A stretch of DNA of 64,000 nucleotides from Paramoeba atlantica (Eukaryota; Protista; Discosea). This document shows, piece after piece, positions 1 to 53,650 of this stretch. How positions within the stretch are numbered: the stretch's first letter is position 1; every line of letters begins with the position of its first letter. Under the pieces are notes generated by a model. It was given only the letters and a program-made list of their open reading frames with translations, was not told the DNA's origin and ran no database searches. The DNA is taken from the NCBI GenBank assembly GCA_977017575.1, contig CDRNVI010000059.1:248001-312000 (forward strand), written 5' to 3'. Made by a program: the position numbers and the translations under genes.

Positions 1-3000
1 GACGTGTCTAACCAAAACAAAAACCTGTCCCTGAAAGGCACTCCCACAGACAGGGTTGCAAAACCTGCTACCCGAACCGTCCAGGCTCTCATATCCCAAA
101 AGAGCAATGAGTCCCTTACCAGCGACACAGGAGAAGCACCCCCAGCTCCATGCAAACATCCTTGTAAGGACAAAAGCACCTGCGGACACCCCTGTTGCAA
201 GCGGGGTGTAACGCGGCCACATATCCTGGTCACTCCTCACACAAACGAACTTCCCCCTCACCCCGTCCCCCCCACCACACAACAAACGGTTCCGGAATGC
301 AAACACCGCTGCAAGGACAAAGCTCACTGTGAACACCCATGCTGCAAACGACACCTGGTACGCGTAGCAAAACCGGATACGTACAACAATAAGAGAAGTG
401 ACGCACCGGTGGATGCAAGAGAAGACGTGAAGGTGATCACGGCTGTGAGTGTAATGCCGGTACAACGTAGCACACCCTGTAAGCATGTCTGTAAAAACAA
501 ACAGACCTGCGGGCACCCATGTTGCAAACGTAATCTTACACCAACAACATACGAACTCACGAGCACTACGGCGAGCGGTCAAGAATCCGGGCCCAAAGAA
601 GCTCCAAGTACGCGACAAAGGGACGAAACGTCACCGCCATGCACGCGTGACCGCGTAACACAGGATGTGAAAGTACCGAAATCAAGCAACCTACTTGGCA
701 TGGCAGCGCGAGCTGCAACACGATATCTGTTTTCAAGCCGCACTCAACCGTACGCTAACGGCACTCCCTCAACCCCGGCGGTAACCGTACGACCTCACAG
801 CAGCACCGGACAGGATCGCTTGTCGTACACAATAGCACCCTGTCCAAAAGACGAACACGATTTACATGTACCCCCACCCAAGGAGGTTATTCCCCATCAA
901 AAATCACCCACTGTTACCGTCGGTCGTGCCGTCGCATCAACTGCCTGCTCGCTTGCCAAATTCCTACTTTTCAACGGCGTTCCATGTCAAACTCCGGACT
1001 CCCAAAGCCTCCCCAAACCTAAATCTCAAACACAACTTCAGGTCCACGCCTTAACTAGCGTATGCAAGCATATCTGCAAGAGTAAAGATCAATGTAAGCA
1101 CGTGTGCTGCAAGCAAGGCCTAGGCCCCGCCTCCGAACAAGCAGACCGTGTCGAGCCCTGTAAGCATAAATGTAAGAACAAAGCAGGGTGCGGCCATCCT
1201 TGCTGCAAACGCACTGGCACACCGTTGACTTCGCTTGACACACCGATAAGCAAACTGGATGGGCAGGATACTCTACCCACCGGCCCATGTACCCTTCCCA
1301 AGAATCTCGTCACACCGTCCCTAAACGCAACCACTACGACAGCTGACCGTGCCGTTGCCAGGGAACCAACCATCCCGACTCCCAAAAACAAGGCACCGGA
1401 AAGTATCATTCTCTTGGTCTCATCTTCCCCAGCACACCAACACAGTCCGCGGAATGAGAATGGCGATGACGAAGTCCCATCCTGGGTTTTCCAACAAGCG
1501 CACAGCGTAGGGCGAATACAAAGCCCGCCGCTTGAACAAGGAAGCCTCTTACCCCCATCACAACTGGACACCCATTTACATTCGGACGAATCCGAGGGTC
1601 CCCAGATTCCCATACAAACTCCCGACAGCCCGTCACAGTATCTCCCGCCGCCCCAGGACCTCACGCATCCCGTAACCCATAACCGACACAAGCAACGTTT
1701 CCACTTTATCCAGTCCCGGTCAAAACCTGTCAAACTCCGCCTCGTCAACGACAACACATGGAGATATTTCCCGGATGTGCATGCAGCATGCGTAAGCCAA
1801 CTTGTGCGTAGTCGTATCCCTTCCCCCCAGGGGGCTGAAGCCGCCCTGTCCAAAGCGCTCAATGGGAAAAGTGCAGCACACGACATCGTCGTAGAAACGT
1901 GTACCGTAGACGAACTTATGGAAAAGAGAGCGTGTGACTTTTTAGAAGTTAGTAGAGTAGACTCAACAAGTCACATTTCTCGCCACGCGAACTGGGTATC
2001 TCTTTTTCACGACAGCCGCCTGGAATTATACAACCACTACGCATCACCTAGCTCAATGGGTAAAGCGGTAAACAAGGTACTGAACGGGAGAGCGGTCCCT
2101 GGGTTATCGGCGTTTCGGATCGTTCTGCTCCTTCGCACCGACGACAAAGAAGAAGTACAGCCATCAAAGCCCCAAACGGTCCCAACACTTCCACCATACG
2201 AGATTATTTCGCGTGACCACGCCTCCTCCTTGAAGCGGACGCACCCATGCCAACATCGATGCATAAGTAAACTCAAATGCAGCCATCCATGCTGCAAAAT
2301 CTATGGACCATCCCTCGATCAGGGAATCGAAGGAGACTCTGAGGGGAGCCCCAACGCAGGACAAGAGCAAGAACACCCCGAACTTAACCCCCCCACTTCC
2401 GCTTCCTCTCCGAGACTACTCGACGAGACGGAGTACCTTTTCCGCACGGCACGATACATCCAGGGGGGCAAGTTAAACATAAACTTGGCTGACGCGCACT
2501 GGCACGAGGTGGAACGTAGGGCCCTCCACAGATGCAACACCTTGCTCACTGTCTCTGGCGACGCACTCTCCGCCGTCCATAACGCAGAACTACTGAGTGC
2601 AATACTAGCGGTGTCGGCATATGAAGTGGCGCGAGACGTCGACTCCAGGAAGGGTTTCATTATCCGAACGGCTCGAGGACACATAAAGGGGAAAGTCCGT
2701 CCATTAGAAAGCGAAAAAGTTGCCTTTTCCTTCTCTCGACATGTAAAACAACTACAAATGAAGCTGCGATACACACACGGCAAGGCTCCCCGCATGGCGT
2801 TGAAACAAAAGATTAAGGAAACCAAAAAGGCGGAACGTATATACAGCGCAGAAGCCATGGCCCAAAAACGGGAACTGGAAAGTCGCTGGGCACTTCAACA
2901 ATTCAACCGCAATCCATGGACGGCTGCGAGTCAAACCTTGAACAAAAGGACAGAAGCAGAAAGTGTACCGGCCTATCCGACTTGCAATGTACAGAAAGTG

Positions 3001-5483
3001 GAAAGTGTGTTCACAACATTACTTACGGACCCCACTACAGTGCATCACTTACCACCCCACGACGTCCTCGGAAACCGTCCTCTGGCAGAAATGACCTGGG
3101 ACGAACTGGCTTCAATCGACATTTCGAACGCTCTCACATCAAAGAAAAACAGCAGTGCTCCAGGCCAGGACTCCATTACGTACCAGACTCTAAAGCGATG
3201 CCACAGCTCCCACACCCACATGGCAAACGTCTTCAACGCGCTAGTGCGCTTCAGCACATGTCCGACGTCGTGGAAAATATCCGTCACTCGCCTCATTTAC
3301 AAAAAAGGGGAGCCTGACAACCCACAAAACTGGCGTCCCATCGGCCTGACTAGCGTACTAGGGAAACTCCTGCATTCCATCATCAGCCGGAAAATGACGA
3401 AATTCCTACTTGAAGCCTCTGTCATTGACCCCAAGATACAGAAAGGCTTTCTCCCCGCCATTAACGGTACTCTCGAACATACGCAATCCCTCTCAGAGCT
3501 CCTACGCCACTACCGGAAGAACAAGTGGAACTACTGCATGGCCCAGCTAGACCTCAGTAACGCCTTTGGTTCAGTCCCCCGCAACATCATCTTTGAAGCA
3601 CTGGAATGGGCGAGAATCTCCCTAAACATTATTAAATACGTCCAATGCTTATACACTGACGCAAGTACCCGCATTAAATGCTACGAAGGTCTGTCCAGCG
3701 CGATCCCAGCTAAACGAGGTGTCTTACAAGGTGACACTCTCTCTCCTACGCTCTTTCTGGTGATTATGGAGCTAGCCCTACGTTACATGGCAAAATCGTT
3801 TCCCTCATTTGGATTGAACCTCCCTGGATTTCCAAAAAGCTTCCTAAAAGCGTACGCCGACGATCTCACGGTCCTGACGAATAGTGAAAAAGAAATGCAA
3901 CTGGCTGTTGAAACACTATCCACGGTACTCAGTTCGCTTGGCCTTTCCATCAACGTCAAAAAGTGCAGAGTCCAATATATGGCGTCCAAGAAAAATGATG
4001 AACACCCCGCCTACATGACACGACGTCCCCAAATTTTCATCAAGAACGAAGCTATACCGCATATATGCGACGAAGGAAGTACGTTTCTTGGCATGAATAT
4101 TGCCCCCGGTTCTCAACAATCCCGAGCCCTTTTCACGAAAGTTAGGCCCTTATTGAAGCGATGGCTTCATAACATTGACCAGTCGGCCCACGACCTCCCA
4201 TCAAAAATTTGGATATATCAACACGCAATCATCTCTCGGCTACGCTTCACCTTTACTATACACCCATGTATCACGCTCAACTTTATTTTACGCCTTCAGA
4301 AAATGTGTACTCACTCCCTGAAACGGTGGATCAATGCGGCTAGAACTACATGCAGCGAAGCAATCTACTCTCAGCGTGGATGGAACATCTGCAGCTTGTC
4401 CAGACTCTGGGAGGACTGTACAGCTGATCTTCTCTGTCAAATGAAGCGGTCCCGAGACCCGAACGTTACGTCCGCACTGCAGGAAAGAATACGGGCTGAA
4501 GAACATAAGCGCAGGAAAGGCCAAATTCGACCAGCATGTGACATCACACACATACTGGAGGATCGCGACCTCGCAAAACGAACTCTTCTTGAGCTTAATG
4601 AGGACCGAATGATCAACGCACTACGCCGCAGGTCAACGTTCGCTATTCAGTGGTGGGATATAGCCTCCGAGGAAGAACAGGCGAAAGATTTCAGCGCCGC
4701 GATAAACGGACTACGTAGCACTTCCCTTAGCCGCTTCGCAACTTCTTTAATGGTACAAAACACTCTCCCTACTAGGACAATGCTGAGGACATGGGGAATT
4801 CACGGCACAGATACAGTACAATGCCGAATTTGTAAACAAGAACCGGAAACATTACGACACCTCTTATCCTCGTGCAAGGTATCACTAGAACAGGGACGTT
4901 ACACATATCGCCATGATTGTGTACTCTCCACCTTTGCAAACGCGATACTCTCTTCCCCCCATACCGCAGAGGCACATTTTGATCTCCCACACCTACGTCA
5001 ACTACCCGCATGGTGGTCCGACCTGGAAACACAGCTTCGCCCAGATGGAATCGTCAAACTCAACGACGGAACTGAATTTATCGTTGAGTTGACGATGCCC
5101 TGGGAGGAAAACGTACACGAAGCCCACTGCCGAAAAGTAGAAAAGTACATAAATATTCTACACCGACGAAAAATAAGGTACTCAGACTGCCACTTGATAT
5201 GCTTTGAAGTTGGAGCTAGAGGTCTCCCTTCTACGACGCTGCGTCACATCAACCGTCTCTTTTTGGGTGACAAGGCACTCTCAGATAAGTGCCGTGTCGA
5301 AGTCATCCGAACGGCGATCCGGAGCAGCTTTCAACTCTGGCTGAAAAGGGAATCCCCTTTATGGGACAACCAAAGCTTTGGTTAGCAAATGGTCTAGCAG
5401 GCGACGTCATATGCGTACGTCCTGTTAGACTTTATTACTCTACAGGTAATGCCCTGTATAGATATAATTATAATTAATTATTT
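1..5483 (+). mobile_element. RLE-type non-LTR retrotransposon, HERO-like clade; 5' end outside the window
   Basis: Single ORF with RT followed by CCHC knuckle and restriction-like endonuclease; ~100 bp 3' UTR with hairpins (e.g. TACAGG-taatgc-CCTGTA) ending in an AATT-rich tail that abuts an LRR gene fragment. Confidence 0.92.
4..5385 (+). CDS. Retrotransposon polyprotein: 6 CxHxCxxKxxCxHxCC fingers, RT, CCHC knuckle, RLE endonuclease; reading frame open at the 5' edge
   Basis: RT motifs SAPGQDSI, NWRPIGL, QKGF, DLSNAFGSV, GVLQGDTLSP, AYADD; C-terminal CRICKQEPETLRHLLSSC, QGRYTYRHDCVL, LRPDGIV, ELTMPWEE, RKVEKY, EVGARG, LWLKR resemble the HERO consensus. No internal stops in 1793 codons. Confidence 0.95.
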   Translation: MSNQNKNLSLKGTPTDRVAKPATRTVQALISQKSNESLTSDTGEAPPAPCKHPCKDKSTCGHPCCKRGVTRPHILVTPHTNELPPHPVPPTTQQTVPECKHRCKDKAHCEHPCCKRHLVRVAKPDTYNNKRSDAPVDAREDVKVITAVSVMPVQRSTPCKHVCKNKQTCGHPCCKRNLTPTTYELTSTTASGQESGPKEAPSTRQRDETSPPCTRDRVTQDVKVPKSSNLLGMAARAATRYLFSSRTQPYANGTPSTPAVTVRPHSSTGQDRLSYTIAPCPKDEHDLHVPPPKEVIPHQKSPTVTVGRAVASTACSLAKFLLFNGVPCQTPDSQSLPKPKSQTQLQVHALTSVCKHICKSKDQCKHVCCKQGLGPASEQADRVEPCKHKCKNKAGCGHPCCKRTGTPLTSLDTPISKLDGQDTLPTGPCTLPKNLVTPSLNATTTTADRAVAREPTIPTPKNKAPESIILLVSSSPAHQHSPRNENGDDEVPSWVFQQAHSVGRIQSPPLEQGSLLPPSQLDTHLHSDESEGPQIPIQTPDSPSQYLPPPQDLTHPVTHNRHKQRFHFIQSRSKPVKLRLVNDNTWRYFPDVHAACVSQLVRSRIPSPQGAEAALSKALNGKSAAHDIVVETCTVDELMEKRACDFLEVSRVDSTSHISRHANWVSLFHDSRLELYNHYASPSSMGKAVNKVLNGRAVPGLSAFRIVLLLRTDDKEEVQPSKPQTVPTLPPYEIISRDHASSLKRTHPCQHRCISKLKCSHPCCKIYGPSLDQGIEGDSEGSPNAGQEQEHPELNPPTSASSPRLLDETEYLFRTARYIQGGKLNINLADAHWHEVERRALHRCNTLLTVSGDALSAVHNAELLSAILAVSAYEVARDVDSRKGFIIRTARGHIKGKVRPLESEKVAFSFSRHVKQLQMKLRYTHGKAPRMALKQKIKETKKAERIYSAEAMAQKRELESRWALQQFNRNPWTAASQTLNKRTEAESVPAYPTCNVQKVESVFTTLLTDPTTVHHLPPHDVLGNRPLAEMTWDELASIDISNALTSKKNSSAPGQDSITYQTLKRCHSSHTHMANVFNALVRFSTCPTSWKISVTRLIYKKGEPDNPQNWRPIGLTSVLGKLLHSIISRKMTKFLLEASVIDPKIQKGFLPAINGTLEHTQSLSELLRHYRKNKWNYCMAQLDLSNAFGSVPRNIIFEALEWARISLNIIKYVQCLYTDASTRIKCYEGLSSAIPAKRGVLQGDTLSPTLFLVIMELALRYMAKSFPSFGLNLPGFPKSFLKAYADDLTVLTNSEKEMQLAVETLSTVLSSLGLSINVKKCRVQYMASKKNDEHPAYMTRRPQIFIKNEAIPHICDEGSTFLGMNIAPGSQQSRALFTKVRPLLKRWLHNIDQSAHDLPSKIWIYQHAIISRLRFTFTIHPCITLNFILRLQKMCTHSLKRWINAARTTCSEAIYSQRGWNICSLSRLWEDCTADLLCQMKRSRDPNVTSALQERIRAEEHKRRKGQIRPACDITHILEDRDLAKRTLLELNEDRMINALRRRSTFAIQWWDIASEEEQAKDFSAAINGLRSTSLSRFATSLMVQNTLPTRTMLRTWGIHGTDTVQCRICKQEPETLRHLLSSCKVSLEQGRYTYRHDCVLSTFANAILSSPHTAEAHFDLPHLRQLPAWWSDLETQLRPDGIVKLNDGTEFIVELTMPWEENVHEAHCRKVEKYINILHRRKIRYSDCHLICFEVGARGLPSTTLRHINRLFLGDKALSDKCRVEVIRTAIRSSFQLWLKRESPLWDNQSFG

Positions 5484-11558: not shown

Positions 11559-12210
11559 ATGTCCTGCTTGAATTTTCATACCGCTGACTCGTCCTCTCGA
11601 TCAGCAAAGGTGCGAGGTGCTGTTTTACCGCAAGAATTCACGCTGTCACAATTGGTGAGTGTTCTTTCCTACAACTCCTAAGCGTCCTGGACGAATGACA
11701 CTCCTGCATGTGAATAGTCGTACGTCCAGTGTAACACTGAACAGAAAGTAGTTCGACTATTTTTGAGATTCTCGGGCCTATGGTTTTGATTGTCCCACAC
11801 TAGAAGAGGAAGATTATCCCACACTAGAAGGCGAATTGTTGTGGAAATACTTGTCGCCTACGTTGTTATACTTTGGTGCTTCGTCGCAGTCCTTGAGCGG
11901 GCTTGTGGATCTCTCAATTTTACCTCCCGATCTTAAAAAAATCAATATCAGTATGAATCAGTGTAGTGGATCATTGGATTTGACGTGCTTGCCCTCTACT
12001 CTTCAAGCTATGTACCTCGATAAAAACAGATTCAAAGGTGAAATTGATCTGACATGTCTTCCACCATCGATCCGCGAAATCTACTTGGGCGAAACTGAGC
12101 TATGTGGGGAACCGGATTTCACGAAGCTGCCCGAAGGGTTACAGGTACTGGACCTCTCTTTCAACAAGTTTGGTTGGCGTGGGGATATACCTGCTCTAGT
12201 AAGAATCTAG
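11559..12210 (+). pseudogene. Degraded LRR gene
   Basis: 5' part reads SAKVRGAVLPQEFTL...SYNS*ASWTNDTPACE*SYVQC (in-frame stops), then frameshifts into the open LRR segment 11836-12210. Confidence 0.8.
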
Positions 12211-34877: not shown

Positions 34878-36160
34878 ATGGATATCGATTCATCAACCAC
34901 GAAGCTTGGAAAAGCAAAAGGCTGCTTACTTCCTATCGAATATAATCTTGTCCGCGTCTTTGAGAAAATAAGAAATCGCGATCCCTCATGGAGTTTGGAA
35001 AATCCGCCATGTATGTGGTCAGGATTTGAATGCAACGCAGAACAACAGCTTATTGCGTTTCGCTGGAATGAATATTATTCTCTTGACGGACCATTGATGT
35101 GGGAATTCGTGCCGACTACACTTCAGACTATTAGTATCAGTTGTACCTTACTTAGTGGCAGTATACCGTTTGAACAACTTCCTCCAAGGTTGGAAGATTT
35201 AAGCCTCTACAGTAACAAACTTGTAGGCAGTATTGATCTGACTAGGTTGCCTGTGACACTCTTCAACCTTTCTGTACCTTGTTGGTACTTTTTCCTTAGT
35301 TAATCCTTTCTTTCCCCGGCAACGGGCATACTCTTACTGTATTTTTATGCCCGTTGCCGGCCGGAACTAAGGTCGGAACTGTCCCTCTTGTCGCTGAAGC
35401 AGGGGACGCGCTTTCACCCCTTCACCCCTCCCCGACTCACTACCCTGGAGTGAGTGTGCTTCCCCCTCTCGGCTTTTTTCGACTTGTCTTTTTCCTCTCC
35501 GAGAGGGACATGCGTCACGGTGGCCTCCCTTGAGGACCACTAGACGTGTCCTCCGCCGACGAGACTCGGTTCTCTGCACCTGGCGGTCGCCCAGCTCTCC
35601 GCACCTCGGCTCTGTCGCAGCTCTCTGCACCCGGATTGCCCCCGAAACTGTAATATGGGGATTACGCATCCGGCTCTCTGCACCTGCACATGACAACCGA
35701 GCTCTCTGCACCTGGGACGTCAGCTCTCCGCACCCGCACACCTCCGGCGAGGACGAAACCTCACGTGATCCACCCGTCGTATGCGGGATAAGGACATGGT
35801 GAGTAAATCTCTGCACTATAAGTGCATGATAAAACAATGTGTTCAAACTCCTTCTCCGGAGCGGTAGTGTTGAACGCTCTTCCTCCTCGGCTATGCCAAC
35901 TGGACTTATCTGGAAACGATTTCTCGGGTGCACTTGATTTACGAAACCTTCCCGCTTCATTATCCGAACTCTACTTGCACAACAACAAGTTTGGGGGATT
36001 CTTACACTTTGACAGGCTTCCAGTGGGTTTGAATGCTCTTACGTTGGGAACGAATGAGAATTTGACAGGTACCATTGATGCTGCGCTGCTTCCCGCATCA
36101 CTCCCTATCGGCGACATTGACTACAGTGAGACTGGAATTCAACTTCTACTCGAGGGATAA
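34878..36160 (+). pseudogene. LRR gene split by a ~563-bp insertion
   Basis: Joining 35272 to 35836 gives RLPVTLFNLSMCSNSFSG, an exact LxxLxLxxNxF repeat in one frame. Confidence 0.88.
35269..35836 (+). mobile_element. SL-RNA-headed SINE-like element, copy A (5'-truncated in the SL exon)
   Basis: Begins TTTCTGTACCTTGTTG/GTAC; colinear with 39118-39390 and shares the terminal hairpin + TGATAAA; interrupts an LRR ORF. Confidence 0.75.
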
Positions 36161-36270
36161 TACTCTTAATAGTTCATGAAGATGTTTCCATACGAGTAAA
36201 GGAAGAACTTACAATTTCTTTCAAATTTCGCGAATATAGAAAATCTTATACTACAGATATAAATTTGGCA

Positions 36271-37112
36271 TACAGTCAGCAAAAAAAAACCTTTCGAATG
36301 TTTTGATTTTTTTTCTTTTGTATACAGCCATTGATTAAATATCACTGTTGCGCTGGTAATGTGTGCTAAGTAGTGTAGGCATGAGTGTCATCCAACAGCA
36401 CCCATAGATAGTTCACCTCAGTTCGTTCTACCCAAGAATTAAGAATGAATTTAAAAAAATGTAGCCTTCGAAAGGTTTTTTTGCCTAACATAAACCAAAC
36501 CTAACATAAATCACGTACCCGCAAGACCCCTAGCAAGATACAGTTTCTGTACCTTGTTGGTACATTTTGCTAGCCCTTCCTTTCTTTTCCCGGAAAACTT
36601 CCGACCACACAACTGGAGACCAGTTGTGCGCTGTCCAGTGCTCATGGGCCGTGGCAAAGTCCATCCGAAGCTTGCGATGGCGCTTGGACAGGTAGAGCTT
36701 TCGGACACGCTTTCTACCTTTGTGTCCGAAACGGTGCATCGAAACTCGGATAGACTGAGGAACAACATCGGCAACGCTCTCGAGGCGCAGCTGAGATGAA
36801 ACCTCTCGCGCAGAATTGCCAGAGAACACAAGTCGTCGCACACGGCGTGTGCACGGCTCGGAAAGCTTTCGAGGGCGTCCACCCTGCAGAGAGTATCAGG
36901 CCTTTCTTGTTTTAGTATCATAGAAATTGTTGAGATGCTTAAGTTAACTGTATCAGAGATGGACCTCATAGACACGCCGCTGTCGTACTATTAGGTGACA
37001 CTCATGCCTACACTACTAGCACACATTACCAGCGCACCGATGATACTTATTCAATGACTATATACAAAAGAAAAAGAATTGAAACATTCGAAAGGTTTTT
37101 TTGCTGACTGTA
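36271..37112 (-). mobile_element. Internally deleted Tc1/mariner transposon
   Basis: TA|CAGTCAGCAAAA ... TTTTGCTGACTG|TA; ~125-bp imperfect TIRs; frameshifted transposase (SMRSISDTVNLSISTI HTH; GRKRVRKLYLSKRHRKLRMDFATAHEHWTAHNWSPVVWSE) broken before the DDE core. Confidence 0.92.
36535..36596 (+). ncRNA. SL-RNA-like fragment (exon 3' part, GT donor, intron start) inside the Tc1 element
   Basis: 62 bp identical to 39109-39170. Confidence 0.75.
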
Positions 37113-37541
37113 CATGTGCACCTGCAGGTACGCCTGAGAATTATTTTTTACCCGAGAATTATTTTTCTTAAAGTTCCATAATGAATGGGGATTTCAAAAA
37201 ATAATAGAAAAGTTTTTATTGGGTTAGAATACGTATGGTGCACTAACTGTAAACAAACTGCGATAAGAATGGCGGTATACTGGTAGAGCTGTATGATATA
37301 AAGGGCTACATGTACTGAGAAACACAGGTCTTCGAAAGCTAAACCACAGAAAATAAAGCTTATGTTAATGCATTTCGGTTTTCGTTTAATAAGCAGTTTG
37401 CAAGCCAAAGTGGGAACAGAAGAATACTTTCCACATGGCGAATACATGATGTAGAACAGCGAGAATATGTTTTTTTCTTTCCTTTCTTTCTTTCTTTCTT
37501 TTCACTGTAGTTGGTACTTTCTTTCCCCTCATCGATTACCC

Positions 37542-38135
37542 ATGGGACTTTTCGACTGGTTCTGGGACCTCCTCTCCTATCTCGGCTTTGGCGGCAAGGA
37601 GGGGAAGATTTTATTCCTTGGCCTAGACAACGCTGGCAAGACCACGCTGCTGGGGAAACTCACCACGGATGAGATCCACATCCACCGACCCACACTTCAC
37701 CCGAATGTCGAGGACCTCGCGCTTGGGGGAATTAAACTCAAGACATTTGATCTTGGAGGACACGCCGAGGCCCGACGTCTGTGGCGGGATTATTTCACGC
37801 AGTGTGACGCTGTGGTGTTTATGATTGACGCCGCGTGCCCGGAGCGCTTTCCGGAGGTCCGCGCGGAGCTGGAGCAGCTGCTGCAGGCCGAGGAGCTTCT
37901 AACGGCCCCGTTCCTACTTCTGGGGAATAAAATCGACATGGTACATCGTGCGGTGAGTGAGGAGAGTCTGAAACAGGCGCTGGGAGTTACGGGGTTCACG
38001 ACCGGAAAAGCAGTAGGTGTGGTCTCGAAAAGGAGCGGGATACGTCCCGTTGAAGTTTTTATGTGTAGTGTGGTGAAACGGACCGGGTACGGGGATGGGT
38101 TTCGCTGGCTGGCGCAGTATTTAAAAAACGTGTAG
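37542..38135 (+). CDS. SAR1: COPII small GTPase Sar1
   Basis: MGLFDWFWDLLSYLG, GLDNAGKTT, FDLGGH, GNKID; ATG at 37542 follows the pyrimidine tract and AG. Confidence 0.97.
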   Translation: MGLFDWFWDLLSYLGFGGKEGKILFLGLDNAGKTTLLGKLTTDEIHIHRPTLHPNVEDLALGGIKLKTFDLGGHAEARRLWRDYFTQCDAVVFMIDAACPERFPEVRAELEQLLQAEELLTAPFLLLGNKIDMVHRAVSEESLKQALGVTGFTTGKAVGVVSKRSGIRPVEVFMCSVVKRTGYGDGFRWLAQYLKNV

Positions 38136-39090
38136 TGCGGTGGGGAAGTGAGTAGGTCTGGAGATAGGGGGTAAATAGCGGGAAGAGAATCATTGGTCAG
38201 GCTTTCCGGAGTGTTTAAAGGAGGCACCCGGAGTCAAGGTATAAACATACGAACCGACTTGCGCTGAACAATGAGTTGTTAATGTTGCTATTTTATGCTA
38301 ATTGGGTTTTATACATGTGCTTAATTTTATTTGGGTCTCTTTTTATATCCAACGTTGTGAGAACGTCGCTTGTTCCTGGGTTTGTTTTTATAATCTAGTG
38401 GCTTCGTTAGACGCGGTGATTGTTTTCAACGTAGAAGTCATTGCAGCTACGCGTTTCGTTGGGAAAATTACCTCCACCTGAACGGAGTGACTAAAACATG
38501 GGCAAGAGAAGCGGAACCACGGGTATTTGAGCCAAAAGTAGGATCAAAGTTAGTATTGTTAAGGAATCGAAGTATCGATTCATATTGCCCTTTTGGGCAG
38601 GTGAACATACATAACATACCCTTATGGGTCTCAGGGGTCCGGACCCACCCGGTCCCAGGTCCGTGCGTATCCGGACCCGGGCACACCATAGAGACGTTTC
38701 TCATACACCGTTTCTCATACAGAGTGCACATGTATCTCGCGTATCGAGAGTGGGTGAAGTAGTTGAAGGACTTCTGCAGTACTGGTATAATGTAATACAT
38801 TGTACCACTAAGGTTGTTCACTACTAAACTACTACACCACTAAGGTTGCTATACATTGTATAGCACATGTGCATGTTTTCACATTATGGGCATGTTATGG
38901 TGCTACAGGCATGTTAACTTTTTGAACCTTCGTTTGAAAGTGATCGCACAAAAAATGGTATTGACCTTAGTGTGAAATTAAACGCTACAAAACTTTGCTT
39001 TAAACTTTACAGCTTTCGAAACTCACTTACTTCCTCAGGGCTTCCATTATTCCTGACTTGCACTTTTGAAATCCACTTTTGTATAGTGCA

Positions 39091-39688
39091 AACATAGGCT
39101 CCTCCATAAAGATACAGTTTCTGTACCTTGTTGGTACATTTTGCTAGCCCTTCCTTTCTTTTCCCGGAAACGGGCATACATTTTCCTTTTAAATGCCCGT
39201 TTCCGGCTGACGGCTAGCGGAAACTGTCCCTCTTTGTCGTGGACGTAGGGGACGTACTTCCGACTTTTCACCCCTCCCCGGCTCACTCCTTGAGTGAGTT
39301 TTCTTCCCTCCCCGGCTTTCTTCTTCTCGCGCCTGTCTCTTCCCGGGAGCTATGCGCCATGGTGGCCTCCCTTGAGGACCACCGGGCGTGACTCTGCCTC
39401 GCATTATCGCGAAGCAGCGGTCGGTTGCAGTGCGCCCCTCCGGCTGCGTAAAGAGATGGTGAGTTGCCTGGACCACCTCTACCGACTGGGACCGAGTCGG
39501 TTGCAGTACGCCCCTCCGGCTGCATAAAGAGAGGGCGAGTTGCCTGGACCCCCTCTACCGACAGAGTCCGTGTCGAACCCCCTTTGGCGACATCCGTTGT
39601 GGGCGGATTATGTGCCGATGATATCGGCCGTCGCAGTAAGGGGATTATCTCTGCGCCAAAGAGCGCATGATAAACAAATGATAAACAA
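39091..39688 (+). mobile_element. SL-RNA-headed SINE-like element, copy B (longer SL head; could be an SL RNA gene unit)
   Basis: AAGATACAGTTTCTGTACCTTGTTG/GTACATTTTG, four shared stems, internal 76-bp duplication, terminal hairpin, tail TGATAAACAAA-TGATAAACAA. Confidence 0.7.
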
Positions 39689-40049: not shown

Positions 40050-40811
40050 ATGGCAGAGACTTTGCTGCGACAAAATCGCTTAGGAAAAGCGCGAGCCAAA
40101 CTGCCAGACGAATACCATTTAGCTCAATTCCTACAGAAAATTGACAACAAACATCCCTCCTGGACTACGAATACTCCCGTATGCAAATGGCATAATATAG
40201 AGTGTGATGCCAACGGTGAAATTTTTCGAATTAATTGGACAATGCTCTCTCTCGAAGGAACACCACATTGGACCCATCTATCAAATATAAAGTGCATTTT
40301 CATATTCCTTAACAGTAACAAACTACTGGAAGAGATCGTGTTGAAATGGTTACCCCCGAACATTAGACTTTTCAATGGTAGCGGCAACAAGTTTGGTGGC
40401 GGTTTAAATTTGAACGAACTGCCGAAACAGATAGAAAGCCTGCAATTAGATAGCTGCCACCTACGCGGGACCATTTCTCTACACGATCTGCCCCATGGAT
40501 TTCAGTCGCTGCAGTTAGGGCAAAATCAGCTCTCGGGTTGTCTTGACTTTCGAGCGTTACCTGTCTCAATCAACTTGTTGGGTTTCTCATACAACAACTT
40601 TTCAGGACCTGTAGATTTACATATTCTTCCATATTACATCCTTTTATGGTTAGACAACAATCCGAATCTCTGCGGAGAGTTTGATCCAATACGCTTCGAA
40701 CGCAGCATTAACACTTATGGTACACAAATCAAGAAACTCCCGCCTCGCGGTTCTTATAGTTGCTTTTTGTCTCTGCGATACGTTTTTGATTCCGATATCT
40801 GGAGGTTTTAG
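40050..40811 (+). CDS. LRR family protein
   Basis: RLGKARAKLPDEY motif, PSWTTNTPVCKWHNIEC cap, LRR repeats. Confidence 0.87.
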   Translation: MAETLLRQNRLGKARAKLPDEYHLAQFLQKIDNKHPSWTTNTPVCKWHNIECDANGEIFRINWTMLSLEGTPHWTHLSNIKCIFIFLNSNKLLEEIVLKWLPPNIRLFNGSGNKFGGGLNLNELPKQIESLQLDSCHLRGTISLHDLPHGFQSLQLGQNQLSGCLDFRALPVSINLLGFSYNNFSGPVDLHILPYYILLWLDNNPNLCGEFDPIRFERSINTYGTQIKKLPPRGSYSCFLSLRYVFDSDIWRF

Positions 40812-49252: not shown

Positions 49253-52200
49253 ATGACGGATACCTTCTTAACTCCTCCCCCTCTTGTCTCTCACACACGT
49301 TACGGCACCCTACACGCCACGCTTCCCTTTCCGTTAAGTACGGAGGAGCTCAGCAACGCCGAGACCGCACTCAAGGATTTGCCCCGGGATGTTCACTCCG
49401 CAGACGCCTTTCTTCCCTTGACTCATCCGGATCATTTTACCCCATGGAATGCATCGGCCTATATGAATTCCCCTGGACATCGTGCTCCTCCTGAAACACC
49501 TTCACAGATTGCTGTTGGATCTGCAATCACAGAAATCGTAGAAAACACGCGGTCGCCGTGTGTGACCATCGTGCATGGTGGAAAAGGGAGTGGGAAATCC
49601 ACCTGGATTCCGCTGGCTCTCCTGAACGCTCATTCTGGAGCACGCGTCTTTCTGGTGTCCCCTTTTCCCGCAAGTTGCGCACTAGTAGCTTCCCGTATTG
49701 TGGAGTTAACAGGATGGACCATGGGGGTTGAAATTGGTATTCAAACCTCACTGATTGATATGGAGATTGCTCCGACTTCTCGTTTGGTTATTTGCACACC
49801 AGAGATGATGGTGAGACGACTACAAAATGGGTGCGACCCCCACTTGATCAACTCGTTGCTTGTGTTGGATGAAATCCAAACACGTCATCCGTATTTGGAT
49901 TTACTCCTCTTGCTGGCGAAGCAATTCGTACATGTGTTAAATCATTCTGTGGTTGTAATGGCAGGTCCGATGGACGCCAGCTCATTCATCTCTCGACTAC
50001 GTGCTTACATGGAATCAGGCACGGAGGGGAGCTGCTGTGTGGTAACAGTTGCAGATTCTCCCATTGGTGGGCATGAGGCTTTTCAGGAATCTTTACCTAC
50101 TGAACAAGCAAACGAAACCTCGGAAAAGGGGTTGAATGAAGACATCATTCGGGCAGTACACGCTTCTACACCTGAAATTTGGGACTTGGAGCGCCTACTG
50201 GGCATGGTTACCAAGCAGGATGACAACACTTCTCAACTTTTTGAAGAGCGCCTATCTTCTTTTTCGAATCTCGATGCAGATTTCACCACCATTTGTACTG
50301 AAGTCATTTCTCCCGTACTCACCACAATGCATTGTGATCTAGCCCATGACAACGGGGGCTTTATTGTCGTTTTGCCCGATGAGGCTTCCTGCACCTTGGT
50401 CGCTGAACATTTGCAATCCGCCTACATCCCCGCCTCCCAAGCACCCCTAACCGTGTTTACCCTACACGAAAATTCAACCTCCGAACATGCACAAGAAGTC
50501 GCAAACGCCACATTACCCTATCGTCAATCCTTTGCCACACCAAAATCCGAAACCACGACCCCCACACCACCCCGCCCGCGCCCCGTACTCCTCTCCACCT
50601 ACGCCACCCTCCCCACCCTCCCCATCCTCCTCTCCCCCACCGCCCTCCTCCTTGACACCTGTCGTCGTACCCTTCACCGTTACGACCCTATCGAAGACGC
50701 TGAATCCCACATCCCCACCTGGATTACCCTTGACCAACTTCAAGCCAGTGCACAGACCCTTATCGCCTCGAATCCCCGTCACTTTAACGCTGTCTCGTCT
50801 AGCGCCTCGAATCCCCATAGTCATCCTAACGCTACCTCTTCTACCTCTGCTTCTACCCCCTCTTCAGAAACCGCTTCTTCGGCTCCTCCTTTTACCAATA
50901 CCACTACCTCTTCTCCTTCTGCAACCCCCTCTCCATCCAGCGCTTCTTCGGCTCCTCCCTTTACCCGTTCCACCACCCCTTCTGCAACCCCTTCTTCATC
51001 CATCCCTTCGGCTCCCTTTACGAGTTCCACCACCCCTTCTTCAACCCCCTCTCCATCAAGCGCTTCTTCGGCTCCTCCCTTTACCCGTTCCACTCCCTCT
51101 TCTTCTTCCACTCCCTCTTCTTCCACTCCCTCTTCTTCTTCCGCTCCCTCTTCTTCTTCCACTCCCTCTTCTTCTTCCGCTCCCTCTTCTTCTTCCACTC
51201 CCTCTTCTTCTTCCACTCCCTCTTCTTCCACTCCCTCTTCTTCTTCCACTCCCTCTTCTTCTTCTTCTGCTGCTGCTGCCGCTGCCCCCTCTTCTTCTCT
51301 CTCTCCCCGCCCCCGCCACCTCCTCCTCCTCCCCTCCCCCGCCCTCTCCGCCACCCTCGCCCTCGAGTCCCCCTCCCACGACCCCATCCAGCACACCCCC
51401 CGCCTCCACGAGCTTATCCTCCAGCTCTACCTCCTCACCGAGGCCCTCCGGCAGCACAGCCCCGAGCGCGTCCTCTGGCAGCTGCTCCGCCCCCCGGGCC
51501 CCGCGGCCGTGGAGGCCGCGCTGCGGGGACTCGCCCAGCAGGGGCTGCTGACCCCGGGGGGGGCAGCGCTCGCCCCGATGGGCAGAGTGGTGGCCCACCT
51601 GGGGCTGCCGGTGGGGGTCGCGCGCCTGCTGGTCGGGGGGCTGGGGCTGGGGGTGGGGAGACCGCTATTGTGGTTGGCTGCGGCTGCGGGGATGCCGGGG
51701 TGTGAGGGGTGGAGGAAGGGAGGACCAAACCGCAGGGATGGGGCGCAACCCGGGGAGGGGGGTTCGATGAGATGTGACGCGGAGGTGATCGGGGGACTGG
51801 CGCAGCGGTACTTGGGGGAGATGGACCGTGTGGGGTTTTGTGCTCGTATGGGGCTGGAGGCGGAGGTGATGGGTCGGATCACGAGGACAGCGTCGCGAAT
51901 GGAGAGGTTGCTGCAGTCGTGTGGGTTGCTGGGGGAGAGTGCTGGGGTGTATGTCCCGCCACTGTCGAGGAGTTTTACCGGGTCGCTGGGGTTTACGGGA
52001 GCGGCGCATCGGGATCGGGAGGTGCATAGCCGGTTGGTACAACATGCTGTGGTGAGTGCGCTGTATCCCCGGGTTTGTTGTATCGAACGCGGAGGCTCTA
52101 CGGTGTTTTTTCCTCATCTTACGACGGAGAAACGGGAAGTAAAAGTATCGTTTGACACACTTGCTCATCTTTCTTTTACGGATGGCACGGTATTGGCTTA

Positions 52201-53650
52201 TTCTCGTAAAGTGTCTCACTTGGATTCCTCCGGGACTGAACACATTACGTTATCAGGCCTCTGTGAAGTTCCATTGCTCAGTCTCGTGCTGTGTAGTGGT
52301 AGTGCAGGAGTAGAAGAGACGCCCAGCTCAGAGTTGACAAGAGGAGCGATAAAATCAAATAGCCGAAAACCTCGACAATGTCGTGGGTGGTGGCCGAGTC
52401 CTTTCGATGCGGTCGATCCAGCGGTACAAAGCGTCGTGGCTCCGATCTCACGACACGCAACGTTATCCGAAAGGGAGAGAGAAACCGAAACCTCTCCGTT
52501 TTCTTCCTCTGTGAAAAGCACATGCCCCCGAAATCCTACAGTACCGTGCTACATCCTGGCTCGGACTACAGAGAAGGCTTGGATCCGACTCGACCATGCG
52601 TTGTTAATCGCGGTAGATGCGAGTGCGTTACGGTTGTTGTTTGCGTTACGCAGTACGCTCTATGCTGCCGTGCTGCACTGGCTGGCGTTCTCGCGCAAAC
52701 AAGCCCCCGGGTCGGTACTCCCGGCTCCGTTACGTGACGTGCTCCCGTGGCTGTTGTTTCTTACGCACCGTAACCCGAAAAAGCTTACAGAGTATTTAGC
52801 GGAAATTGGGTTTGTGAACAGTCGTCGACTTTTACAAGACGCCACCGCGCCGATTCATATTATGCCACGCTGGGGTTCGTACTTGTTACGACGGAAAGAA
52901 GAAAAACGTGGAGAAAAAACAGAAGAGCAGAAGGCTGTGGATGCCGCAGAAAGTCAGTCACAGAAAGGAGAAGGCTCTGCCGCGACGACGCGTGTGGGTT
53001 CAATGCCAGAAATCGAAACCGATTCCCTTTCCGCGCCCTTCCCCCAACTGCGTGCAAAAGAGCACGAGCTCATCCATCGCACCGTGGAGATTCTGGTCAA
53101 AAAAGGCACGAAACAATTCGAAATGGAGTTTCGTCGTCGGGTCGCGGACAACCCCTGTTTTCGTTTTCTGCAAGACCACAGCCCCGCCCACCCGCACTAT
53201 TTAACGCTCTATGCCGCGGAACGACGACACGCGGAAGCCAAGATGGATGGAGGCCTGGTTTATCCTCCTGTTGAGGGGGGGAACGAGAATCATCTTTCGG
53301 GGGAAGAACTTCCCCAAATCCAGCTGGAGTACCTCCCCCCTCATCTCGCAGCTGCGTTCGCGCTCACGGCGGTGTCGTCCTCTCCCGCTTTCGCGCATAA
53401 ACCCATGGAATACAATTTAGAGGGCTCCACACTGAATACGGTTTTGCGTTACTACAGTGTGGAGTTTAGCTCGGTACGGCTGCCGAATGCTGCTGTCCAT
53501 CGAGCGCTGCTGCTGCCTCGGAGTTTTGTCCCGATCCGTACCGCCGAGGGGAGGAAACGGGAGGTGCTGCGCGCGTATCGCACAGCGGGGCTGCTGGAGA
53601 GTGATGGGCTCACGGCACGACGCGCCGCGATGCGACGCAGGGGGGAGTGA
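49253..53650 (+). CDS. DEAH/RHA-like helicase homolog with degenerate motifs and a C-terminal SURP-like domain
   Basis: GGKGSGKST, LDEIQ, HA2-like LAPMGRVVAHL, AVVSALYP; LIHRTVEILVKKG.QFEMEF...NPCFRFLQDHSPAHPHY. Confidence 0.75.
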   Translation: MTDTFLTPPPLVSHTRYGTLHATLPFPLSTEELSNAETALKDLPRDVHSADAFLPLTHPDHFTPWNASAYMNSPGHRAPPETPSQIAVGSAITEIVENTRSPCVTIVHGGKGSGKSTWIPLALLNAHSGARVFLVSPFPASCALVASRIVELTGWTMGVEIGIQTSLIDMEIAPTSRLVICTPEMMVRRLQNGCDPHLINSLLVLDEIQTRHPYLDLLLLLAKQFVHVLNHSVVVMAGPMDASSFISRLRAYMESGTEGSCCVVTVADSPIGGHEAFQESLPTEQANETSEKGLNEDIIRAVHASTPEIWDLERLLGMVTKQDDNTSQLFEERLSSFSNLDADFTTICTEVISPVLTTMHCDLAHDNGGFIVVLPDEASCTLVAEHLQSAYIPASQAPLTVFTLHENSTSEHAQEVANATLPYRQSFATPKSETTTPTPPRPRPVLLSTYATLPTLPILLSPTALLLDTCRRTLHRYDPIEDAESHIPTWITLDQLQASAQTLIASNPRHFNAVSSSASNPHSHPNATSSTSASTPSSETASSAPPFTNTTTSSPSATPSPSSASSAPPFTRSTTPSATPSSSIPSAPFTSSTTPSSTPSPSSASSAPPFTRSTPSSSSTPSSSTPSSSSAPSSSSTPSSSSAPSSSSTPSSSSTPSSSTPSSSSTPSSSSSAAAAAAPSSSLSPRPRHLLLLPSPALSATLALESPSHDPIQHTPRLHELILQLYLLTEALRQHSPERVLWQLLRPPGPAAVEAALRGLAQQGLLTPGGAALAPMGRVVAHLGLPVGVARLLVGGLGLGVGRPLLWLAAAAGMPGCEGWRKGGPNRRDGAQPGEGGSMRCDAEVIGGLAQRYLGEMDRVGFCARMGLEAEVMGRITRTASRMERLLQSCGLLGESAGVYVPPLSRSFTGSLGFTGAAHRDREVHSRLVQHAVVSALYPRVCCIERGGSTVFFPHLTTEKREVKVSFDTLAHLSFTDGTVLAYSRKVSHLDSSGTEHITLSGLCEVPLLSLVLCSGSAGVEETPSSELTRGAIKSNSRKPRQCRGWWPSPFDAVDPAVQSVVAPISRHATLSERERETETSPFSSSVKSTCPRNPTVPCYILARTTEKAWIRLDHALLIAVDASALRLLFALRSTLYAAVLHWLAFSRKQAPGSVLPAPLRDVLPWLLFLTHRNPKKLTEYLAEIGFVNSRRLLQDATAPIHIMPRWGSYLLRRKEEKRGEKTEEQKAVDAAESQSQKGEGSAATTRVGSMPEIETDSLSAPFPQLRAKEHELIHRTVEILVKKGTKQFEMEFRRRVADNPCFRFLQDHSPAHPHYLTLYAAERRHAEAKMDGGLVYPPVEGGNENHLSGEELPQIQLEYLPPHLAAAFALTAVSSSPAFAHKPMEYNLEGSTLNTVLRYYSVEFSSVRLPNAAVHRALLLPRSFVPIRTAEGRKREVLRAYRTAGLLESDGLTARRAAMRRRGE

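What the first reader, a model, noticed from the sequence alone, without database searches (positions are those of the whole stretch)
35269..39688. Mobile non-coding element headed by the spliced-leader RNA: candidate SL-derived SINE
Seen: copies at 35269-35836 and 39091-39688 start with the 3' part of a kinetoplastid-type SL exon, continue through the GT donor (TTG/GTAC), share ~270 bp of colinear stem-rich sequence and a common hairpin + TGATAAA end, and encode nothing recognisable. Known: the exon core GATACAGTTTCTGTAC is conserved in kinetoplastid SLs; described SINE heads derive from tRNA, 7SL, 5S or snRNA; CRE/SLACS/CZAR insert into SL genes but are long autonomous elements. Inference: because intron sequence is retained, this is not a retroposed trans-spliced mRNA but an element built on the SL RNA transcript itself, dispersing SL 5' splice donors through a polycistronic genome. 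I know of no such described family.
Basis: partly seen in the sequence, partly recalled or inferred. Interest (0 to 1): 0.92.

Follow-up and report, generated by a model that had tools for sequence, protein, structure and literature searches.

The report
SL-headed retroposon and its partner LINEs
A 0.6-kb non-coding mobile element that begins with the last 28 bases of the trans-splicing leader is real and recently active, but the same 28 bases also head the protein-coding retrotransposons that evidently move it, so it is a dependent offshoot of spliced-leader-associated LINEs, not a SINE built from the leader RNA itself.

Summary
The window has three copies of an SL-like head (35269, 36535, 39106). 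Two belong to ~0.6-kb non-coding elements that share a 280-nt 5' domain and a 3' hairpin followed by ATGATAA. The family is dispersed: 17 copies or fragments in 264 kb of the same genome and about 14 more seen through spurious ORFs. Some copies are 98-99% identical. The 3' ends are constant, the 5' ends are variably truncated, and there are no target-site duplications.

The interpretation needs revising. The full-length 5' end is a fixed 28-mer that aligns without gaps to nt 12-39 of the 39-nt euglenozoan SL exon. It starts at the CRE/SLACS/CZAR insertion point (nt 11/12). The same 28-mer is the exact 5' end of six autonomous R2-superclade LINE copies (RT plus restriction-like endonuclease) from five families. 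In those LINEs it is followed by other sequence, not GT. These LINEs also share the SINE's 3' structure, a Y-shaped domain plus a terminal hairpin with covarying stems.

The element is therefore a non-autonomous partner of SL-headed RLE LINEs. Eight insertion events of the SINE, and one LINE, lie at one position of the leucine-rich-repeat unit. The organism's true SL gene was not found, so intron retention is unproven.

The parts
39106..39688 (+). Full-length SINE copy C, intergenic. Leader 39106-39133 (28-mer = SL exon nt 12-39), GT at 39134-39135, conserved 5' domain to about 39390, two 76-nt tandem units 39420-39571, LINE-like 3' domain 39585-39688.
39648..39688 (+). 3' terminal module of copy C. 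It has a lower stem AUC/GAU, an upper stem UGCGC/GCGCA, and then ATGATAAACAA written twice (39667-39677 and 39678-39688).
35269..35836 (+). SINE copy A (A subfamily), 5'-truncated inside the leader. 35269-35277 (TTTCTGTAC) also fits the expected host codons, so this is a microhomology junction. It splits an LRR gene.
36535..36596 (+). 62-nt head fragment B. It is identical to copy C over these 62 nt and stops at a Tc1-like transposase remnant.
34878..35268 (+). 5' half of the LRR gene interrupted by copy A. It ends ...LTRLPVTLFN(L).
35837..36160 (+). 3' half of the same LRR gene. It resumes (M)CSNSFSGAVVLNALPPRL...
1..5466 (+). 3' part of an R2-superclade LINE (family W), cut by the window start. 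ORF 4-5385 carries RT, a CCHC motif and RHD...E...RPD...E restriction-like endonuclease motifs. The 3' UTR ends in the same hairpin shape as the SINE. It is inserted in an LRR gene at the same part of the repeat unit.
36283..37102 (.). Tc1/Tc3-like DNA transposon remnant with 86-nt terminal inverted repeats (36283-36368 and 37017-37102). An HTH_Tnp_Tc3_2 fragment lies at 36599-36841 on the minus strand. It provides the context for head fragment B.

Best explanation
The element is a roughly 0.6-kb non-autonomous retroposon (SINE-like, comparable to an internally replaced or deleted LINE derivative). It is copied by target-primed reverse transcription using the RT/endonuclease of R2-superclade LINEs that live in the same genome.

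It mimics both ends of those LINEs.
- At the 5' end it carries their 28-nt hallmark leader, ATAAAGATACAGTTTCTGTACCTTGTTG, which equals SL exon nt 12-39, plus a GGCCTCCCTYGAGGACC hairpin motif.
- At the 3' end it carries their 3' UTR architecture: a closing stem enclosing two hairpins, a short spacer, and a terminal hairpin (AUCUC-stem-loop-stem-AUGAU) followed by about 6 A-rich bases where reverse transcription starts.

Shown: the shared ends, the covarying stems, constant 3' ends with variable 5' ends, extra bases at 5' junctions, absence of target-site duplications, recent activity, and sense-oriented insertion at one position of the leucine-rich-repeat unit.

Inferred:
- The SL-like head was inherited from, or is maintained together with, an SL-gene-associated (CRE/SLACS/CZAR-like) LINE lineage. 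The insertion point of that lineage, between SL nt 11 and 12, defines where the leader starts.
- The LINE protein recognises the 3' structure.
- Transcripts arise by read-through within the polycistronic unit or from an internal promoter.

How the RNA 5' end comes to lie exactly at nt 12 is not known.
For: Head identity. The 28-mer aligns ungapped with 19-25 of 28 matches to nt 12-39 of all twelve fully specified 39-nt euglenozoan SL consensus sequences tested, out of the 14 listed in PMC3795323. CZAR and SLACS insert between nt 11 and 12 (PMC5814959).

Fixed 5' end. Six sequenced SINE copies start at ATAAAG, and further ORF-inferred copies do the same.

LINEs. Six LINE copies of five families (48-54% amino-acid identity to LINE W or less) start with the same 28-mer: exactly in L009, L010 and L011, and with 1-3 changes in L010-minus, L012 and L013. 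The profile HMM of the SINE matches them over positions 1-28 only. These LINEs have RT plus CCHC/RHD/RPD endonuclease motifs and no AP endonuclease. Their best solved-structure match is R2 protein across RT and the C-terminus, E = 6.5e-30.

3' end. Eight terminal modules (4 SINE subfamilies, 4 LINE families) fold to one shape with different, complementary upper stems: GCAC/GUGC, GCGC/GCGC, GCAG/CUGC, AGUGA/UCACU and ACAGG/CCUGU. The upstream Y-shaped domain is shared with L009 and L010, with covarying closing stems.

Retroposition signature. 15 of 17 copies reach the 3' end, while 5' starts lie at HMM positions 1, 3-4, 6, 8, 10, 13, 136, 198, 209 and 528. The young subfamily is 98-99.3% identical. 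No target-site duplications are seen: own-flank longest common substring 3.9 against 3.8 in cross-controls.

Target. Eight SINE insertion events and LINE W lie between LPxxLxxL and xLxxNxFxG of different LRR paralogs, always in the sense orientation.
Against: - No LINE or SINE copy was seen inside an SL gene.
- The organism's own SL gene and mRNA 5' ends were not available, so 'nt 12-39 of its SL' rests on alignment to other species.
- Clade membership (CRE versus other RLE clades) was not tested by phylogeny.
- Features reported for CRE elements, namely a poly(A) tail and target-site duplications, are absent here.
- Outside the 28-mer and one 17-nt motif, the SINE 5' domain (nt 29-290) has no counterpart in the sampled LINEs, so simple internal deletion of a sampled LINE is not shown.
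- Primary-sequence identity of the 3' domains is only 35-50%.
- Covariation within the SINE 5' domain is weak, with 2 compensated pairs of 67.
- Which LINE family supplies the protein is unknown.
Confidence: 0.65

Rival explanations
1. The SINE arose directly from the SL RNA transcript (exon plus intron), as tRNA-, 7SL- or 5S-derived SINE heads do. The LINEs share the 28-mer by later capture or by coincidence.
For: In the SINE the 28-mer is followed by GTAC. The segment CUGUACC-UUGUU-GGUACA forms a stem-loop across the donor, like SL RNA stem-loop I, and an AUUUUG Sm-like string follows. The 5' 290 nt are stem-rich, z = -6.9 for the first 151 nt.
Against: No copy contains SL nt 1-11. Five diverged LINE families carry the same leader, cut at the same two boundaries, which a SINE-first origin does not predict. 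The post-exon stretch is partly alignable to the LINE 5' UTRs: SINE copy L3_1 aligns to L010 over 67 nt at 82%, a span that includes the 28-mer. A 14-nt deletion that removes the donor context still propagated to at least 4 loci. No Rfam SL or snRNA match was found.
Confidence: 0.15
2. LINE and SINE transcripts are trans-spliced like mRNAs. The leader is therefore added afresh from SL RNA in each cycle, and reverse transcription stops short of the capped, modified 5' end.
For: The shared block ends exactly at the exon 3' end. It is identical across families whose adjacent UTRs are unalignable. That pattern fits repeated re-acquisition.
Against: The base before the body is TG, not AG, so a genomic copy cannot be re-spliced at the same point. 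Splicing at internal AGs would give nested leaders, and none were seen. The one partial duplication, in L013, does not follow an AG. From general knowledge, the known cap-4 modifications lie at nt 1-4, not near nt 11/12, so a uniform stop at nt 12 is unexplained.
Confidence: 0.1
3. The units are ordinary SL RNA gene repeats or recombination-derived orphons, possibly permuted at nt 11/12. The 11-nt tail ATGATAAACAA plus the 28-mer add up to 39 nt.
For: 11 + 28 = 39 in copy C. Three head-to-tail dimers exist, in L003, L011 and by ORF inference. The unit length of about 0.6 kb is typical of SL repeats.
Against: Tails vary in length (10-13 nt) and in sequence, and none resembles AACTAACGCTA. Dimer junctions give 36 nt or truncated heads, and they join different subfamilies. 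Copies lie inside LRR genes with 5' truncations and constant 3' ends. No upstream sequence is shared between copies.
Confidence: 0.04
4. It is a DNA-level element: a MITE, a solo LTR, or a DIRS/VIPER-SIRE-type terminal sequence.
For: DNA transposons (Tc1, pogo, Harbinger) are frequent in this genome. Head fragment B lies inside a Tc1 remnant.
Against: The element has no terminal inverted repeats and no target-site duplications. Its polarity is strict, with only the 5' end truncated. Its ends are those of non-LTR LINEs.
Confidence: 0.02

Closest known systems
CRE clade of site-specific non-LTR retrotransposons (CRE1, CRE2, SLACS, CZAR) of trypanosomatids
   Same: The coding capacity is RT plus a C-terminal CCHC and restriction-like endonuclease, with no AP endonuclease (motif as quoted in PMC12857005). 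There is an intimate link to the SL exon: the elements here begin at the base that follows the CRE-clade insertion point, nt 11/12.
   Different: None of the 6 LINE copies or 17 SINE copies seen here is in an SL gene. They carry SL nt 12-39 as their own 5' end at ectopic sites. They have no poly(A) tail and no target-site duplications, whereas CRE elements are described with both (PMC12278014 and PMC3636483). Phylogenetic placement was not tested. No non-autonomous CRE derivative is mentioned in the trypanosomatid mobilome survey.
R2 elements and their short internally deleted non-autonomous derivatives (SIDEs; recalled from memory, Eickbush and Eickbush 2012)
   Same: The best structural-sequence match of the LINE protein is R2. 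Integration leaves no target-site duplication and gives variable 5' junctions with extra bases. The dependent short element keeps both ends of the LINE. There is a structured 3' UTR and no poly(A) tail.
   Different: R2 targets 28S rDNA and defines its 5' end with an HDV-like ribozyme. No ribozyme family was detected here. The SINE 5' domain is mostly unrelated to the sampled LINE 5' UTRs.
RIME, NARTc and SIDER with the Pr77 hallmark (ingi/L1Tc clade)
   Same: This is the kinetoplastid precedent for a short conserved 5' hallmark shared by LINEs and their non-autonomous relatives (PMC8190864 and PMC12278014).
   Different: Those are AP-endonuclease LINEs with poly(A) tails and target-site duplications. 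Their hallmark is a 77-nt promoter/ribozyme unrelated to the SL exon.
Classical SINEs (tRNA-, 7SL-, 5S- or snRNA-derived heads with a LINE-derived tail)
   Same: It is short, non-coding and dispersed. Its 3' module is shared with partner LINEs, and it has subfamilies with a modular body.
   Different: The head is not a whole small-RNA gene with an internal Pol III promoter. It is a 28-nt piece of a Pol II-transcribed SL exon that the partner LINEs carry too.
TcTREZO of Trypanosoma cruzi (site-specific for MASP genes; PMC5814959)
   Same: It is a kinetoplastid retroelement that prefers one site in a large surface or repeat-protein gene family.
   Different: TcTREZO is a composite element of different make-up and has no SL-derived head.

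Membership tests
Classical SINE | The head is derived from a small RNA gene (tRNA, 7SL, 5S, snRNA) carrying an internal promoter. | tested here: not met
   ARAGORN finds no tRNA. Rfam finds nothing even at E<=10 on copy C. The head is 28 nt of SL exon, nt 12-39.
Classical SINE | The 3' end is shared with a partner LINE of the same genome. | tested here: met
   The same terminal hairpin shape with covarying stems is found in 4 SINE subfamilies and 4 LINE families. The Y-shaped upstream domain is shared with L009 and L010.
Classical SINE | The element is short, non-coding and dispersed, with retroposition signatures. | tested here: met
   There are no Pfam hits. 17 copies lie in 264 kb; 15 reach the 3' end and the 5' ends are variable.
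CRE clade (SLACS/CZAR/CRE1/CRE2) | RT followed by CCHC plus a restriction-like endonuclease (RHD/N...E...R/KPD...D/E), with no APE. | tested here: met
   LINE W matches the motif. P0022, P0023 and P0025 align with it. No Exo_endo_phos domain is found. R2-like by PDB search.
CRE clade (SLACS/CZAR/CRE1/CRE2) | Insertion into SL RNA genes between exon nt 11 and 12. | tested here: not met
   All 6 LINE copies and all SINE copies have unrelated upstream flanks: LRR genes, a (GT)n run, AT-rich DNA. Only their own first base corresponds to nt 12.
CRE clade (SLACS/CZAR/CRE1/CRE2) | A poly(A) tail and target-site duplications. | tested here: not met
   Tails end in ATGAT(A/C/T)A plus a few bases. The longest common substring of own flanks equals the cross-control.
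CRE clade (SLACS/CZAR/CRE1/CRE2) | RT/RLE phylogeny groups the element with CRE1/2, SLACS and CZAR. | not testable with these tools
   No reference CRE-clade protein sequences were retrievable. The nearest named hit is a fish protein at 26% identity.
R2-type non-autonomous derivative (SIDE-like) | It shares both termini with the autonomous element. | tested here: met
   The 5' 28-mer and a 17-nt motif are shared. The 3' architecture is shared.
R2-type non-autonomous derivative (SIDE-like) | A 5' self-cleaving (HDV-like) ribozyme defines the RNA 5' end. | tested here: inconclusive
   No ribozyme family is found in SINE copy C or in the L009 LINE 5' UTR at permissive thresholds. A novel ribozyme cannot be excluded.
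SL RNA gene or orphon | A complete 39-nt exon starting AACTAACG, with a shared upstream promoter. | tested here: not met
   No copy extends beyond the equivalent of nt 12, and the upstream flanks are unrelated.
ingi/L1Tc-derived retroposons (RIME, NARTc, SIDER) | The Pr77 hallmark, an APE-type partner, a poly(A) tail and target-site duplications. | tested here: not met
   The partner LINEs are RLE type. There is no poly(A) tail and there are no target-site duplications. The Pr77 sequence itself was not available for comparison.

The most novel reading that the evidence does not exclude
The 28-nt SL(12-39) leader is not a fossil. It would be a working module that ties a whole guild of retroelements to the trans-splicing system. 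One form of this idea has master copies residing in SL arrays, so that the leader is refreshed from the target at every cycle, which would explain its identity across families with unalignable UTRs. The other form has the leader letting element RNAs pass as SL-bearing messages. The SINE alone keeps a consensus donor (TTG|GTAC), a stem-loop across it and an Sm-like site. It could then act as a rogue SL RNA, or as a dispersed 5' splice site inside polycistronic transcripts, and produce chimeric leaders.
Probability: 0.15. Interest if true: 0.85.

Novelty: new variant of a known kind. Interest (0 to 1): 0.62.

Why it matters
SL-gene-specific LINEs (CRE, SLACS, CZAR) have been known since about 1990 as residents of SL arrays. 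In this uncultured kinetoplastid-like protist, at least five related LINE families and a young SINE carry the downstream part of the SL exon as their own 5' end while sitting outside SL genes.

This gives a natural experiment on three questions: how restriction-like-endonuclease LINEs change targets (here to a leucine-rich-repeat gene family and to microsatellites), what their target-derived 5' leaders are for, and how non-autonomous partners arise in this superclade.

The system also inactivates members of a large LRR gene family at a fixed codon position. It scatters SL-type splice donors through polycistronic units, which could be tested directly with RNA data.

Tried and rejected
- Rfam at gathering score on the whole window gave nothing. 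Permissive thresholds on copy C and on a LINE 5' UTR gave only chance miRNA-like hairpins.
- ARAGORN found no tRNA.
- An exact-pattern scan of the JGI metagenomes gave one hit, which proved to be a chance match with unrelated flanks (L002). Two scans of the prokaryote genomes and one of the viral contigs found nothing.
- The organism's own SL gene was not found. No 28-mer preceded by an AACTAACG-type sequence occurs in 264 kb. Only one copy (L7a) has TAACG before the head, and I judged that coincidental.
- The idea that the unit is an SL repeat permuted at nt 11/12 (11-nt tail + 28-mer = 39) was considered and rejected. Tails vary, and the dimers are heterogeneous.
- A 'mini-intron' reading of the 14-nt deletion subfamily (GT...AG) was rejected. 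The real deletion is TACATTTTGCTAGC.
- A target-site-duplication search was negative.
- LINE W at the window start was first dismissed as a partner because its 3' sequence differs. It was rehabilitated once the fold proved to be the same.
- A MAFFT alignment of the 3' modules was too poor for pair counting. Individual folds were used instead.
- The original CRE1, SLACS and CZAR papers are not held in the library. The duplication sizes I recall for them (29 bp for CRE1, 49 bp for SLACS) therefore remain unverified memory.

Full report
**Observation**

The 20-mer TTTCTGTACCTTGTTGGTAC occurs three times in the window, all on the + strand, at 35269, 36544 and 39118. None is expected by chance.

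Their bodies then diverge, and they converge again on a terminal hairpin followed by GCATGATAAA.
It is a 62-nt fragment identical to C and abuts a Tc1/Tc3-type transposase remnant inside a pair of 86-nt inverted repeats.
- ORFs within the copies match no Pfam family. Rfam and ARAGORN find nothing.
- An independent assembly of the same organism (ENA ERZ24900291, contig ctg3982l, 99.8% identical) carries all three copies.

**Setting**

All long ORFs of the window lie on the + strand. They include ordinary eukaryotic genes: Sar1, UPF1, dynamin, a Sey1/RHD3 GTPase, citrate synthase, a tRNA synthetase and peptidase M3. Sar1 is preceded by a long pyrimidine tract and an AG. This is the layout of a kinetoplastid-type polycistronic unit.

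The genome also holds Tc1, pogo and Harbinger transposase genes. Trypanosomatids are reported to lack these (PMC12278014). The organism is therefore probably a non-trypanosomatid kinetoplastid or a close relative. I could not name it.

**The family is real, dispersed and young**

No public DNA collection that I could scan holds this genome. I therefore used the spurious ORFs that gene callers place on the minus strand of the element as probes. They led to 13 further contigs' worth of protein evidence and 11 fetched loci.

- A profile HMM built from nine copies finds 17 SINE copies or fragments in 264 kb.
- About 14 more copies are visible only as ORFs on other contigs.
- Fifteen of the 17 reach the 3' end (HMM position 585-586). 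Their 5' ends start at positions 1 (six copies), 3-4, 6, 8, 10, 13, 136, 198, 209 and 528.
- One subfamily is 98.0-99.3% identical between loci. The A subfamily has a second copy at 98.2%.
- Flanks show no target-site duplication: the mean longest shared substring is 3.9 against 3.8 for mismatched flank pairs.
- Several 5' junctions carry 2-12 extra bases.
- Copy A splits an LRR gene. Its two halves match the paralog at 40050-40811 with E = 3e-18 and 5e-14.

This is the signature of target-primed reverse transcription. It is not the signature of an SL gene array, an orphon or a DNA transposon.

**What the head is**

Full-length copies start with ATAAAGATACAGTTTCTGTACCTTGTTG, and in the SINE this is followed by GTAC. 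I compared the 28-mer with the 39-nt euglenozoan SL exon consensus sequences tabulated in PMC3795323, using the twelve without extra ambiguity codes. It aligns without a gap to their last 28 positions, with 19-25 matches.

It therefore corresponds to exon nt 12-39. It ends at the splice donor and lacks nt 1-11 (AACTAACGCTA in most species). No copy, sequenced or ORF-inferred, extends further. Upstream flanks are unrelated.

Position 11/12 is where CZAR and SLACS insert into the SL exon (PMC5814959). CRE-clade elements all use the same relative position (PMC12278014).

**The decisive result: LINEs with the same ends**

The window itself begins inside a LINE (family W; ORF 4-5385). It has RT, a CCHC motif and RHD...E...RPD...E endonuclease motifs, and no AP endonuclease. 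Its best match among solved structures is R2 protein, aligned from RT to the C-terminus, E = 6.5e-30.

A search with its RT-endonuclease region found five further LINE ORFs in the same assembly at 41-54% identity. I fetched all five.

- Each LINE starts with the 28-mer, at 77-660 nt upstream of its ORF. The match is exact in L009, L010 and L011, and has one to three changes in L010-minus, L012 and L013.
- The SINE HMM matches these LINEs over positions 1-28 and nothing else at the 5' end.
- After the 28-mer the LINEs read AATTATTTTCAATTT..., TTTTTTTTCTCTT..., T15 or, in L013, a 10-nt partial repeat. None of them reads GT.

The block shared by all families is thus bounded by the CRE insertion point on one side and by the exon end on the other.

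The LINEs also end as the SINE does. Eight terminal modules (SINE subfamilies A, C, Y and L4; LINEs L009, L010, L012 and W) fold to one shape. It has a lower stem AUC/GAU, a two-base bulge and an upper stem of 5-6 bp. The upper-stem sequence differs but stays complementary: GCAC/GUGC, GCGC/GCGC, GCAG/CUGC, AGUGA/UCACU and ACAGG/CCUGU. AUGAU(A/C/U)A follows.

Upstream of this module, the SINE (C and Y) and LINEs L009 and L010 share a Y-shaped domain. A closing stem, entirely different in sequence in each, encloses a hairpin with loop UYGURKG and a second hairpin.

A further motif, GGCCTCCCTYGAGGACC flanked by GCGC...GCG, occurs in the SINE at about nt 260 and in three LINE 5' UTRs at about nt 110.

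**Target choice**

Eight independent SINE insertion events lie in different LRR paralogs, in the sense orientation. They include tandem dimers of unlike subfamilies in L003 and L011. All lie between the LPxxLxxL and xLxxNxFxG parts of the repeat unit. LINE W lies 1-2 codons away in another paralog.

The young subfamily ends ...GATCAT(A/G)AC, and the host usually continues C-T-N-G. A few bases of overlap between the RNA 3' end and the target (RACC) are therefore plausible as the priming site; this is inference. Other SINE copies are intergenic or lie in a Tc1 remnant. LINE L012 sits in a (GT)n run, and L009 is followed by (TA)n.

**Interpretation**

The best reading is that the element is a non-autonomous partner of SL-headed, restriction-like-endonuclease LINEs. 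It keeps their 5' hallmark and their 3' recognition structure, and it is copied in trans by target-primed reverse transcription.

The SL piece is most simply a legacy of an SL-gene-associated lineage of the CRE/SLACS/CZAR kind. It starts at nt 12, as the sequence downstream of that clade's nick does. The near-perfect conservation of the 28-mer, next to UTRs that cannot be aligned between families, implies one of two things. Either there is strong selection on it, or it is continually refreshed from SL genes, for example if master copies still reside in SL arrays. I saw no such copy.

How the RNA 5' end is set at nt 12 is open. Possibilities are an internal promoter, processing of tandem or co-transcribed copies, or a ribozyme not represented in Rfam.

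**Rivals**

It does not explain why nt 1-11 are always missing, or why five LINE families share exactly the exon part. A subfamily lacking 14 nt just after the head has also spread to at least four loci, so that segment is dispensable.
- *Re-acquisition by trans-splicing.* It explains the exon-end boundary and the identity across families. It fails on the missing AG acceptor and on the uniform start at nt 12.
- *An SL repeat permuted at 11/12.* It is contradicted by variable tails, heterogeneous dimers and insertion into genes.

**Comparison and novelty**

In mechanism this resembles an R2-type LINE with dependent short derivatives. In history it appears tied to the CRE clade. As a member of that clade it fails three described features: residence in SL genes, a poly(A) tail and target-site duplications. 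The phylogenetic test could not be run.

I found no description of an SL-headed non-autonomous retroposon, or of CRE-like LINEs carrying SL nt 12-39 at ectopic sites, in four full-text searches. I rate it a new variant of a known kind.

**Limits**

- The organism's SL gene and transcripts were not available.
- Sampling of copies was biased by the ORF-proxy route.
- The partner family is not identified.
- Statements about R2 ribozymes and SIDEs, SLACS and CRE1 duplication sizes, cap-4 positions and T. brucei orphons come from memory, not from tools.

Noticed in passing
window 1-5466 (+), host gene 5484-5775: The 3' part of an R2-superclade LINE (family W) is inserted in an LRR gene whose paralog lies at 11560-12210. 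A 5'-truncated copy of the same LINE is at L003:4122-4449. The ENA contig ends at this LINE's 3' end.
   Followed up: partly
window 36283-37102: A Tc1/Tc3-like DNA transposon remnant has 86-nt terminal inverted repeats and a transposase HTH fragment on the minus strand. A third TIR-end-like string lies at about 36455-36487. Tc1, pogo and Harbinger transposase ORFs are common in other loci of the assembly, which is unexpected for a trypanosomatid-like genome.
   Followed up: partly
window 5484-5775, 11560-12210, 34878-36160, 40050-40811, 60836-63469: Several members of one plant-type LRR gene family, with an LRRNT-like N-cap, lie in a single 64-kb polycistronic unit. At least two are broken by retroelements.
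   Followed up: partly
L012:7895-7943 and 12637-12700; L009:10348-10400: LINE L012 lies in a (GT)n microsatellite, and LINE L009 is followed by a (TA)n run. Different LINE families of this group may each have their own repeat target.
   Followed up: no
L013:4691-4735: The LINE head has CTGTACTTTGTTG, closer to the canonical SL than the usual head, followed by a second TACCTTGTTG. This is a partial duplication of the leader's 3' end.
   Followed up: no
L007:10256-10260 (minus strand): One SINE copy is preceded by TAACG, the sequence of canonical SL nt 4-8, between the host codon and ATAAAG. Other copies have unrelated extra bases there.
   Followed up: no
all element 5' ends (e.g. window 39134-39165; L012:7944-7958; L011:9361-9375): A T- or T/C-rich run directly follows the 28-mer in every LINE family and in the SINE. 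Its function is unknown.
   Followed up: no
L012:12665-12700: Directly after the L012 LINE tail comes a stretch (CCCCCTCTACCGACAGAGT...) that matches the body of SINE subfamily C. It suggests a nested or adjacent truncated SINE.
   Followed up: no
window 63663-63947 and 50834-51307: There is a 71-72-nt tandem repeat of four units near the window end. There is also a TCT/CCC-rich coding repeat inside the 1465-aa ORF 49253-53650.
   Followed up: no
window about 38886: This is the only sizeable difference between the window and the ENA contig. The latter has about 32 extra bases here. Elsewhere the two differ at 0.05-0.2% of positions, as expected of two haplotypes or isolates.
   Followed up: no
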